DNA of 64,000 nt from Orbicella franksi (lineage: Eukaryota), in assembly GCA_964199315.1 (NCBI GenBank), contig OZ116698.1:25854001-25918000 (forward strand). Direction: 5' to 3'. The translations under genes were made by a program, and so were the position numbers. Below are positions 38,701 to 41,700 of this stretch, piece after piece. Under the pieces are notes generated by a model. That model had not been told where the DNA came from and did no database searches. It saw nothing but the letters and a program-made list of their open reading frames with translations. Positions within the stretch are counted from its first letter, which is position 1. Each line of letters starts with the position of its first letter.

Positions 38701-41700
38701 TTCGCACATTGTCTACATGCTCAGAAAATGTTCTACTGTACACCAGGACATCATCAAGATATGGAATACATATTTCATCGCGGAGACCTTCTAGGCATTT
38801 CTCCATGTACCTCTGGTAAGCTGCCGGTGCATTTTTAAGGCCAAAGGGAATCCGGTTCCACTGGTATAAACCCCAGGGGGTGATGAACGCTGTTAGATGT
38901 CGGTGTTCTTCTGCTACGAATCCTTGATGATATGCCTTTCCTTGGTCTAACACTGAAAAGTAAGTGTTCCCACTGAGACTATTCAGGATGTCTTGGATGC
39001 GAGGGATGGGCTGGCGGTCATCCTCAGTTTTGCTGTTTAACTGCCTATAGTCAACACATAGTCTCAGACTGCCGTCTTTTTTTCTCACACACACCACTGG
39101 GGAAGAGTAAGGTGACTTTGAGTTGCTTATCCAACCACGATTGATCATATCCTGCAAGTGTGACTTTACCTCTTCGTACAAGGGCTTTGGAATTGAATTG
39201 TATGTTTTTTGTACTGGGACGTCATCTCTCAGGTTGATTTCCAATTTCAAATGTTCGGCACATCCAATGTCACCATCATCTGTAGCGAAGGCCCCGGATT
39301 CTTCCCTCAACATCTCCTTGACAATCACCCGTTGCTCACTTGACAAATGGCTCAAGTCAACTGGGGGAGTCCACTTTGCTTTACTTTGTTCGGGCTGACT
39401 TGGCTCCCACTCATAACTGGTTGCCTCACTCCAAGTTTCACCTTCCTCTTTCTCTTGTTTCTGTTCAGCTTCGACTGGCAGTGGCGTGACGGACTGCACT
39501 AACTGTATAGTGCCCAGTTCTGTCCGCCTACGTAAGGTCATCTCTCGTTCGGTGTTGTTGCATACTGGAACATACATTCGGCTCGAAGACCTCGGGGAGA
39601 TTCGGTGGAGACAGCCCTGAACTTCTAGCCCCTCAGGCCACGCCCCTTCCTCTTTGGGCTCAAACACAACAGGCAAATCTTCTTCTAATAGTCCAAAGTG
39701 TACCTGAAATTTGACTCTCACAGTCTCTCCTGGTGGGACACGTATGTCTTGTCTGCCGACTCTGAGCATACCGGTGTCAGCTTCATCATCCATACTTTGG
39801 ATGAAATTAACCAGCGCTCTTGCTTCGCCCTCTTTCACAGATGGGAACGAGTCATTCACTATTCGGGGCAATAGGCTGGTTGTGTTGGGGCTACTACTCC
39901 TCTTAATGACCTCTTCAATGACATTAAAGCCGATGATGGGATACTCCTGATTATCTTCACTTCCTATTAGTATGGGTACTGTCAATGGCTCCGAGTACCC
40001 GTCCTCCCCAACCAACTGGAACTCTACCTCAATCCAGCCATCATATGCGATTTTTGTACCGTTCACGGCCTGGAGATTTAATCCATCTTCCCCCAATAAC
40101 TCGCTTATGTCTCTTACTGGCTCATTTGGTAGGTTAATTTCTTTCCAATGTTTGGACACAACACAAACTTGAGCTCCGGTATCCCACAGGGCATCCACCT
40201 TTTCCCCTTGAATCAAGCAGGAAACCACACATTTTCTTCCCACTAATTTGGTGAGTTTGGAGCGTTGTCTCGGGGTTAGGTGGGAACTGAACGACGTTTT
40301 CATGGTTTCAACACTTGCCCTTTCCCTCAGTTCAACTTCACTAATGGCTTGACATAGTTTCTTATGCTTCTCCCAATGTTCCCTTTGACAAACTTTTGAA
40401 CAATAGTGGCTAGTATGGCACTGTGAACACCGCAAGTATTGATGTGCCCAATCCTCCCTCTTTCCACAGTTCATTCATTGTTGGGACTGCTCATGAATTG
40501 GGGGGGCTGCTCCTTGTCCCGTGGGGGCAACCCTTGTCTGTTTCCCTGGGGGCTTGCTGAGTTATAGCCCCTTCGGCTTGACCTTAGGCATTGGTAACTG
40601 AAGTGGCCGACATCACCACAGTTGAAACAATGGTTGCAACGGAAACCCCTTCCTTGTCTTTCACAATTCCAGCACCCTCTAGGGCGAACCCTCCCTTGCT
40701 CTACAGGGTTGTACTGTGGGTGAGGGCTAGCGCGGCTTTGTTGTTCCATGCCCTCCCGGATAGCAGCCAATTCCGCTTTCAACTCTCTAACTTCAGTAAG
40801 AAGGTTAACTTTTGGTGGCTTTTCTGGGGTTTTACCTTCAACTGAGGCATGGCTGTCGTCATGGGTGGCCAATTGAGCTACAAGCTGTGTGGGGGTTCGG
40901 TTTGTGAGCTGGTCATGATGGGAACCAAGCTTCTGCATTCTTTCTGTTTCATTACTAACTGCTGCATTCAATTTCTCAAAAAGTTCTTCATCTTCCACTT
41001 GGGTGTTTTGCAGGCATGGTTTTATCTCCATTTTAATGTTATCATTCCGTAACCCAGTTAATAATGAATGCAGAAACATGCACTGTACCAGCTTTGGGTC
41101 ATACTTCAAATCAGATCCTGCTTCTTGAGATGCAAACAGTACTTTCTGCTTTAGATCAAGGAGGCGAACAAGAAAGTCCTGAGGGGTCTCCCCAGCTTCC
41201 TGTACTGCTGAACTGAGCAGCTGATACATTTCCGTAGCCCCCCTTGGTAATGTGACCGGAGTATTTTATGTAATCTGGCAAGATCTAGATCGGGCTTACC
41301 TTCCAAGTAGCTCCTCAATCTAAGGCCTGGATTGATGGCTCGAATAACGGCCTCGACAATTTCTTCTTCTCTATAGCCCCGTTTCAATCCAGCGTTAATT
41401 TGGTGAGCAAGACTGGTAAAGCTCAAGTGATCTTTCTGACGTGAATCTCCAATCTGTCCCGATATTTTAAATTCCTTCCTGAACGGTGGAATCGCTGTGG
41501 TTTCTTTAGGCGTAACTGCATTTGTGCTTGACTTGACAGCAGACTTCTGATCCACATGTTCGGTTTTCACACCACCCTCTTGTTCACTCTTCGCGTCCTT
41601 CGTTGCCGGTTTCTTTTCTTTAATTATTTCTCTGAGATTCGTTAGTGCTTCAGTTCCGAGTTCTTCGGCGTCTAAATATTTCGTTAGGATTTGTATTAAC

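What the first reader, a model, noticed from the sequence alone, without database searches (positions are those of the whole stretch)
40352..40477. MYND-type zinc finger at the N-terminus of a Gypsy Pol, with a TGA exactly at its first Cys position
Seen: upstream of the protease, the pol frame reads CAA CAA TGA ATG AAC TGT, i.e. [43 protein letters not shown]. Established: MYND fingers follow C-x2-C...C-x2-C-x4-YC-x3-CQ-x3-W-x2-H-x3-C and are protein-interaction modules of chromatin co-repressors (ETO/MTG8, BS69, DEAF1, SMYD). They are not part of the standard Gypsy PR-RT-RH-IN set. Inference: the TGA at 40477-40475 replaces the first Cys, so the family encodes an accessory MYND finger inside Gag-Pol that might recruit chromatin factors or guide integration. 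A nonsense mutation in this copy is the simplest reading. A recoded UGA (readthrough or Sec, giving a U-x-x-C motif) is a speculative alternative. I do not know whether this domain arrangement has been characterised.
Basis: partly seen in the sequence, partly recalled or inferred. Interest (0 to 1): 0.8.

Follow-up and report, generated by a model that had tools for sequence, protein, structure and literature searches.

The report
Broken MYND finger in Gypsy Pol
The stop codon is an ordinary knock-out mutation in one decayed copy of a young coral jumping gene, but the MYND zinc finger it hits is a real, strongly conserved first domain of Pol in a large Gypsy lineage found from corals to fish and frogs, and I found no paper that describes it.

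Summary
On the minus strand, TGA (40477-40475) sits at the position of the first Cys of a zf-MYND finger (40474-40352) that heads a 1553-codon PR-RT-RNaseH-IN frame.

The recoding idea is refuted. All 29 sister junctions and all 20 full-length sisters in this genome read a Cys codon there, and so do contigs from four public coral runs. The first Cys is invariant in 35 relatives at 34-52% identity, and there is no SECIS. The window copy also has a private 4-nt gap that shifts gag, so it is a decayed copy.

The element is a 6.68-kb Ty3/Gypsy retrotransposon with 170-bp LTRs and 4-bp target duplications. At least 36 copies are 97-99% alike, and 12 of 20 examined keep both frames open.

Pol lies in the -1 frame. 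A G GGA AAC slippery heptamer sits in the gag frame, followed by a hairpin, 63-69 nt before the MYND. The same layout recurs in six of seven diverged relatives.

MYND-PR-RT-IN is widespread: 449 protein clusters match at E<=1e-30, in cnidarians, teleosts and a frog. No paper I found mentions it, and its function is untested. Two first-stage notes of this scan flag the same architecture elsewhere in this genome.

The parts
41870..42039 (-). 5' LTR, 170 bp, with TGTTACA...TGTAACA termini
   Evidence: The LTR pair has 2 mismatches.
41851..41867 (-). Putative primer-binding site, starting TGG two nt after the LTR
   Evidence: Read directly from the sequence. The matching tRNA was not identified.
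41151..41834 (-). N-terminal part of gag, cut off from the rest in this copy by a frame change
   Evidence: ORF list. Sisters have one 464-codon gag frame.
41244..41248 (-). Site of the gag frame break: a 4-nt gap relative to all 20 full-length sisters
   Evidence: Alignment of the copies.
40471..41229 (-). C-terminal part of gag with a CCHC zinc knuckle at about 40588-40632; gag stop TGA at 40473-40471
40540..40546 (-). Slippery heptamer G GGA AAC in the gag zero frame, the putative -1 frameshift site
   Evidence: The identical or an analogous heptamer is found in 6 of 7 diverged relatives.
40504..40533 (-). 7-bp hairpin starting 6 nt after the heptamer, the putative frameshift stimulator
   Evidence: Relatives have 10-bp hairpins at 5-7 nt spacing. 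In this family the fold energy is not better than shuffled sequence.
40475..40477 (-). TGA at the first-Cys position of the MYND finger, private to this copy
40352..40474 (-). Rest of the MYND finger, carrying 7 of the 8 zinc ligands
   Evidence: Pfam PF01753, PDB MYND matches, invariant ligands.
39893..40228 (-). Aspartic protease with a DTGA active site at about 40183
38612..39088 (-). Reverse transcriptase (RVT_1)
37925..38323 (-). RNase H
36968..37465 (-). Integrase: H2C2 zinc domain plus rve core; no chromodomain follows
35813..40474 (-). The pol open frame as it stands in this copy, 1553 codons
35534..35544 (-). Polypurine tract directly before the 3' LTR
35364..35533 (-). 3' LTR, 170 bp

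Best explanation
The window holds one slightly decayed copy of a young, recently mobile Ty3/Gypsy LTR retrotransposon of a stony coral; the nearest named proteins are from Oculina patagonica. In intact copies, gag (464 codons, one CCHC knuckle) ends inside the first CxxC of a MYND finger. Pol lies in the -1 frame and is most likely made as a Gag-Pol fusion, by ribosomal slippage at G GGA AAC helped by a hairpin 6 nt downstream. The fusion then reads about 22 linker residues, the MYND finger, protease, RT, RNase H and integrase. In the window copy one base differs from every sister, so the first zinc-binding Cys codon is a TGA. A shifted ribosome would stop there, so this copy cannot make Pol on its own. 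Its gag is also frame-shifted by a private 4-nt gap. It is therefore an ordinary null copy, not a recoding site. The MYND finger itself is a conserved, selected part of Pol in a large lineage. My committed reading, which is inferred and not shown, is that it is a peptide-binding adaptor present only on the frameshifted Gag-Pol precursor. It would dock a host proline-motif protein, such as a co-repressor or co-chaperone, during particle assembly, protease activation or nuclear steps.
For: Private stop: 29 of 29 sister junctions read TGC where the window reads TGA. All 20 full-length sisters read C where the window reads A at 40475, one of about 41 private differences, which are mostly transitions. 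Contigs from four public coral runs read the sister base at 40475. The first Cys and the other seven ligands are invariant in 35 relatives at 34-52% identity. No SECIS or other Rfam family scores above noise.

Young, mobile family: at least 36 copies are 97-99% alike. Of 20 sisters, 19 have perfect 4-bp target duplications with unrelated flanks, and most LTR pairs differ at 0-3 positions. 12 of 20 keep a 464-codon gag frame and a 1582-codon pol frame that overlap by 88 nt.

Frameshift: pol is in the -1 frame in all seven lineages examined. An in-frame heptamer of the X XXA AAC type occurs in six of them (GGGAAAC three times, TTTAAAC once, GTTAAAC twice), 63-69 nt before the first MYND Cys. Hairpins start 5-7 nt downstream.

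MYND identity: Pfam; sequence matches to solved MYND domains of SMYD3, SMYD1, ZMYND10, DEAF1 and ETO at E 3e-5 to 2e-3; predicted structure with block-mean pLDDT 95-98 over residues 1-50.

Spread: most of 228 Pol relatives carry PF01753. 65 of 104 Pols on the tree have the finger or an ORF-truncated finger, spread across the whole tree. 449 clusters at 50% identity match the MYND-to-protease profile at E<=1e-30, and 76 of the best 150 do so as one unbroken stretch. Vertebrate examples were confirmed by Pfam.
Against: The base call at 40475 could not be checked against raw reads, because only contigs were available and contigs drop rare variants. Frameshifting is inferred from sequence only. 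In this family the hairpin is short (7 bp), and the 97-nt fold is no more stable than shuffled sequence (z +0.92). One relative (L055) shows no recognisable heptamer. No PxLxP motif exists in the element's own Gag or Pol, so any ligand must be a host protein or a non-canonical motif. No partner was tested.
Confidence: 0.9

Rival explanations
1. The TGA is recoded, either read through or decoded as selenocysteine to give a U-x-x-C zinc site, and this is a designed feature of the family.
For: Only the position supports it: the stop falls exactly on a ligand codon, one base away from Cys.
Against: Every sister copy (29 of 29 and 20 of 20), the contigs of four runs and all 35 relatives have Cys at this position. 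No SECIS was found in the element at E<=1. The base after the stop is A, which from general knowledge is not a readthrough-favouring context. The copy also carries a second disabling change in gag.
Confidence: 0.01
2. The A at 40475 is an assembly or sequencing error, and the real copy has the Cys codon.
For: It is a single-base difference inside a repeat with 36 or more copies. No raw reads were available to confirm it.
Against: The copy carries about 41 private differences spread over 6.7 kb, mostly transitions. It also has 2 LTR mismatches and an imperfect target duplication (CAAG versus TAAG). This is a coherent picture of an older, decaying copy rather than scattered errors.
Confidence: 0.05
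3. In this copy Pol is still made from the ATG directly after the TGA, by re-initiation or internal initiation, giving a Pol with a seven-ligand finger.
For: ATG follows the stop immediately and opens the 1553-codon frame.
Against: The Met is simply residue 2 of the family's C-M-N-C and is not conserved in relatives. In all lineages pol frames run well upstream of any Met and overlap gag in the -1 frame, which points to fusion rather than independent initiation. A finger without its first ligand would probably not fold.
Confidence: 0.03
4. The MYND finger guides integration by tethering the pre-integration complex to chromatin co-repressors.
For: MYND fingers of ETO, BS69 and DEAF1 bind co-repressor peptides (general knowledge). 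Transposons repeatedly capture chromatin-reader domains such as Chromo and PHD, including in cnidarians (bioRxiv 10.1101/2021.11.30.470311).
Against: Known targeting modules of LTR elements sit on integrase. This finger lies N-terminal to the protease and would be separated from integrase by processing. The 4-bp target duplications of 20 insertions show no common motif and their flanks are unrelated. Chromatin-level preference was not testable here.
Confidence: 0.15

Closest known systems
Ty3/Gypsy (Metaviridae) LTR retrotransposons with gag and pol joined by a -1 frameshift
   Same: LTRs with TG...CA ends, a 4-bp target duplication, PBS and PPT, a gag with a CCHC knuckle, and the order PR-RT-RNaseH-IN. 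The slippery heptamer plus hairpin resembles classical -1 frameshift signals; from memory, GGGAAAC is used by luteo- and enamoviruses, UUUAAAC by coronaviruses and GUUAAAC by equine arteritis virus.
   Different: A MYND finger is inserted between the frameshift site and the protease. The LTRs are very short (170 bp). From memory this recalls the Mag/Jule group, but the clade assignment was not tested because no named reference sequences were available.
Chromoviruses (Gypsy elements with a chromodomain on integrase) and other captures of chromatin domains by transposons (PHD, MBD, DNMT)
   Same: A host-type protein-interaction or chromatin module is built into a retrotransposon polyprotein and kept by selection.
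   Different: The domain is MYND rather than Chromo or PHD. It sits at the N-terminal end of Pol rather than on integrase, and Pfam finds no chromodomain in this Pol. None of the papers found mentions MYND in a retrotransposon polyprotein.
Cellular MYND fingers (SMYD1/3, ZMYND10, DEAF1, ETO/CBFA2T1)
   Same: The same C4-C2HC ligand pattern and the YC, CQ, W and HK consensus residues. Sequence matches to solved structures reach E 3e-5 to 2e-3.
   Different: The context is a transposon polyprotein and the partner is unknown. No PxLxP ligand motif occurs in the element itself.
Retroviral transframe region (HIV-1 p6*/TFP) between nucleocapsid and protease
   Same: The position is the same: translated only after the frameshift and lying directly upstream of the protease.
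   Different: Here it is a folded zinc finger rather than a short disordered peptide. Any role in protease regulation is pure inference.

Membership tests
zf-MYND (PF01753) | Profile HMM score above Pfam's gathering cut-off | tested here: met
   33.8 bits in the window and 37.1 bits over the full profile in a sister, against a cut-off of 22.7.
zf-MYND (PF01753) | Eight zinc ligands C-x2-C...C-x2-C...C-x3-C...H-x3-C | tested here: met
   All eight are invariant in the family and in 35 relatives. The window copy itself has only seven, because the first is a stop.
zf-MYND (PF01753) | Similarity to experimentally solved MYND domains and a confident fold | tested here: met
   PDB sequence hits to SMYD3, SMYD1, ZMYND10, DEAF1 and ETO. 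Block-mean pLDDT is 95-98 over residues 1-50. A structure-to-structure comparison of the finger alone was not run.
zf-MYND (PF01753) | Binds proline-rich (PxLxP-type) peptides | not testable with these tools
   No such motif occurs in the element's own proteins. A host partner is unknown.
Ty3/Gypsy LTR retrotransposon | Paired LTRs, target-site duplication, PBS and PPT | tested here: met
Ty3/Gypsy LTR retrotransposon | Domain order PR-RT-RNaseH-IN, with integrase after RT | tested here: met
Programmed -1 ribosomal frameshift signal | X XXY YYZ heptamer in the zero frame inside the gag/pol overlap | tested here: met
   G GGA AAC at 40546-40540. The same or an analogous heptamer occurs in 6 of 7 lineages.
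Programmed -1 ribosomal frameshift signal | Stable structure 5-9 nt downstream | tested here: inconclusive
   Hairpins are present at 5-7 nt spacing in three lineages. In the window family the hairpin is only 7 bp and the fold is not better than shuffles.
Programmed -1 ribosomal frameshift signal | Measured frameshift product | not testable with these tools
   Needs a reporter assay.
Selenocysteine or readthrough recoding | UGA conserved among copies and relatives | tested here: not met
   Cys codon in 29 of 29 and 20 of 20 sisters, in four runs and in 35 relatives.
Selenocysteine or readthrough recoding | SECIS element in the transcript | tested here: not met
   Rfam scan of 35000-42300 at E<=1 gave only a spurious RNase MRP hit.
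Chromovirus | Chromodomain at the integrase C-terminus | tested here: not met
   No Chromo hit in the 1553-residue Pol at E<=0.01.

The most novel reading that the evidence does not exclude
MYND-PR-RT-RNaseH-IN marks an old and so far undescribed metazoan Gypsy lineage, present in cnidarians, teleosts and amphibians. In it, a host-type peptide-binding zinc finger is an obligatory part of the frameshifted Gag-Pol precursor. The finger would form a new kind of interface between a retrotransposon and a host co-repressor or chaperone pathway.
Probability: 0.35. Interest if true: 0.55.

Novelty: new variant of a known kind. Interest (0 to 1): 0.35.

Why it matters
The feature that made the finding look exciting, a possibly recoded UGA at a zinc ligand, is an ordinary private nonsense mutation.

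What remains is a clean and easily testable domain architecture. A MYND finger is always placed about 22 residues after a conserved -1 frameshift site and about 55 residues before the protease. All eight of its ligands are invariant across hundreds of diverged Gypsy families in animals as distant as corals and frogs.

Accessory domains of retrotransposons, such as chromodomains, PHD, MBD and DNMT, have been informative about how elements choose targets or evade silencing. A MYND finger has a well-understood binding mode, so its partner could be found with standard pull-downs.

The family is also a handy natural set for studying -1 frameshift signals, because GGGAAAC, TTTAAAC and GTTAAAC variants occur at a fixed distance.

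Tried and rejected
- **SECIS or other RNA families.** Nothing was found in the element.
- **PxLxP or PPxL motifs.** I looked in Gag and Pol of three lineages for a self-ligand of the finger and found none.
- **Literature.** Six full-text searches combining MYND with gypsy, LTR, Ty3, retrotransposon, Gag-Pol, coral or accessory domains found no paper describing the arrangement. Two candidate papers on accessory or chromatin domains in transposons do not mention MYND.
- **ESM Atlas look-ups.** They gave only one relevant cluster (zf-MYND, Cnidaria) and no further taxa.
- **Raw-read check of the TGA.** This was not possible. Every run offered is held as contigs, which show the family's majority form only.
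- **Shared flank.** The window copy and one sister share a 9-nt 5' flank. BLAST of the flanks found no real similarity, so this is chance.
- **Host range from metagenome contigs.** ENA and Logan records carry no organism names.
- **Assignment to a named Gypsy clade (Mag, CsRn1 and others).** Not attempted, because no reference sequences were available. The Mag/Jule resemblance (short LTRs, -1 frameshift) is from memory only.

Full report
**1. The observation**

Read on the minus strand, window 40483-40466 is CAA CAA TGA ATG AAC TGT. The ATG at 40474 opens a 1553-codon frame that ends at 35813.

Pfam finds zf-MYND (PF01753) at residues 2-41. The score is 33.8 bits against a cut-off of 22.7, over profile positions 3-39 of 39. 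Downstream in the same frame it finds RVT_1, RT_RNaseH, Integrase_H2C2 and rve.

Because the match starts at profile position 3, position 1 of the profile, the first Cys, falls on the TGA.

**2. The element**

The 170-bp LTRs lie at 42039-41870 and 35533-35364. They have TGTTACA...TGTAACA ends and differ at 2 positions. A TGG-initiated primer-binding site follows the 5' LTR after 2 nt, and a purine tract precedes the 3' LTR.

The gag region has a CCHC knuckle. A model of the region after the finger is confident (mean pLDDT 85.9), and its residues 84-195 match retroviral and Ddi1 proteases. No chromodomain is present.

This is a Ty3/Gypsy element of about 6.68 kb on the minus strand.

**3. Sister copies settle the TGA question**

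The window's own genome (497 Mb) holds at least 36 copies of the gag/pol junction at 97-99% identity.

- All 29 sister junctions fetched read a Cys codon where the window reads TGA.
- In an alignment with 20 full-length sisters, the A at 40475 is one of about 41 differences private to the window copy. Most are transitions.
- Another private difference is a 4-nt gap near 41246, which splits gag into two frames.
- Contigs from four public coral runs, three of them from RNA libraries, carry the sister base at 40475 and at the five other private positions in this stretch.
- In 35 relatives at 34-52% identity, all eight zinc ligands, including the first Cys, are invariant.
- An Rfam scan of the element finds no SECIS.

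The stop is a private nonsense change in a copy that is also broken in gag.

I could not confirm the base with raw reads, so a residual chance of assembly error remains. The coherent pattern of private changes, the LTR mismatches and the imperfect target duplication (CAAG versus TAAG) all speak for real decay.

**4. State of the family**

Of 20 full-length sisters, 19 have perfect 4-bp target duplications. These have different sequences and unrelated flanks, so they are independent insertions. Most LTR pairs differ at 0-3 positions.

Twelve of the 20 keep a 464-codon gag frame and a 1582-codon pol frame open. Contigs of 4.3-6 kb carrying the family occur in RNA libraries. That is compatible with transcription but does not prove it.

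I did not build a consensus or single out any copy.

**5. How Pol is reached**

In intact copies the pol frame is -1 relative to gag and overlaps it by 88 nt. Within the overlap the gag frame reads CAG GGA AAC, which gives the canonical slippery pattern G GGA AAC at 40546-40540. A 7-bp hairpin begins 6 nt downstream.

I fetched six diverged relatives with their DNA. In all of them pol is -1 relative to gag. Five carry an in-frame heptamer of the same kind, 63-69 nt before the first MYND Cys:

| Heptamer | Lineages (of 7, including the window family) |
|---|---|
| GGGAAAC | 3 (window family and two relatives) |
| TTTAAAC | 1 |
| GTTAAAC | 2 |
| none recognisable | 1 |

Gag ends 24-57 nt before the finger in the relatives, and 3 nt inside it in this family. 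Two relatives have 10-bp hairpins at 5-7 nt spacing.

The conserved module is therefore: CCHC knuckle, heptamer, hairpin, gag stop, MYND. Frameshifting itself is inferred. In this family the hairpin is weak (z +0.92).

The consequence for the window copy is that a shifted ribosome meets the TGA after 22 codons, so no Pol is made.

**6. The MYND finger**

Its identity rests on several lines of evidence:

- Pfam.
- Sequence matches to solved MYND domains of SMYD3, SMYD1, ZMYND10, DEAF1 and ETO.
- Invariant ligands plus near-invariant Tyr and Gln of the YC and CQ motifs.
- Block-mean pLDDT of 95-98 over residues 1-50 of the model.

**7. How widespread the arrangement is**

- Most of the 228 Pol relatives found carry PF01753.
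- Many annotated ORFs begin inside the finger, because gene callers start at the first Met.
- On a tree of 104 Pols, 65 have a full or ORF-truncated finger, spread over the whole tree.
- Apparent absence is concentrated in one clade of eight proteins whose named members are fish sequences. It also occurs in two fish proteins elsewhere on the tree, and in one further row that is a mutated finger rather than a true absence.
- A MYND-to-protease profile finds 449 clusters at 50% identity with E<=1e-30. Of the 150 best, 76 match in one unbroken stretch from the first Cys to the protease.
- Named hosts are the coral Oculina patagonica, the jellyfish Aurelia (judged from the record's gene label), the killifish Nothobranchius furzeri, the characin Metynnis hypsauchen and the frog Hyperolius riggenbachi.
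- One relative has two tandem fingers.

**8. Function**

Nothing here tests function.

The finger lies where retroviruses have their transframe peptide. It is translated only in the frameshifted minority and sits just before the protease. The element's own proteins contain no PxLxP motif, so a self-ligand is unlikely.

I commit to a host-protein adaptor role on the Gag-Pol precursor, at about 50%. Direct integration targeting gets about 15%, because targeting modules of LTR elements normally sit on integrase and the 20 target sites show no shared motif. Nucleic-acid binding or protease regulation takes the rest.

**9. Novelty**

Six full-text searches and two relevant papers on accessory or chromatin domains in transposons give no mention of MYND in a retrotransposon polyprotein. 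The architecture is visible in public protein databases only through automatic annotation.

Two first-stage notes of this scan flag the same architecture elsewhere in this genome. They are not independent evidence.

I rate the TGA as ordinary, and the MYND-bearing lineage as a new variant of a known kind. The caveat is that Repbase and GyDB could not be consulted.

Noticed in passing
window 33230-33691 and 34543-35088: About 22 tandem copies of a 21-nt unit, and two tandem 273-nt units 97% alike. Both lie just beyond the element's 3' LTR.
   Followed up: no
G000:C7 at about 5921113, 5981405, 6041733 and 6102072 (L021-L023, L028): Four copies of the family are spaced about 60.3 kb apart and share the same private variant in the C-run. 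The element probably sits inside a roughly 60-kb tandem segmental duplication rather than being four separate insertions.
   Followed up: partly
L048 (G000:C11:5132055-5139133): One sister copy has an extra C in the C-run between the slippery site and the finger. This puts gag and pol into a single 2017-codon frame. A 2011-residue member of the same protein cluster exists.
   Followed up: partly
P0047 / L055: A relative carries two tandem MYND fingers before the protease, and it shows no recognisable slippery heptamer in the overlap.
   Followed up: partly
P0263, P0265, P0310, P0332: Proteins with 6-13 tandem MYND fingers, two of them with DUF4470, score at the top of the MYND-to-protease profile search. 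They are host-type poly-MYND proteins without a protease. Their relation to the transposon finger is unknown.
   Followed up: partly
G000:C3:22386588-22387043: A second, related family lies in the same genome, 76% identical over the junction. A Pol at 81% identity also begins M-N-C (P0002).
   Followed up: no
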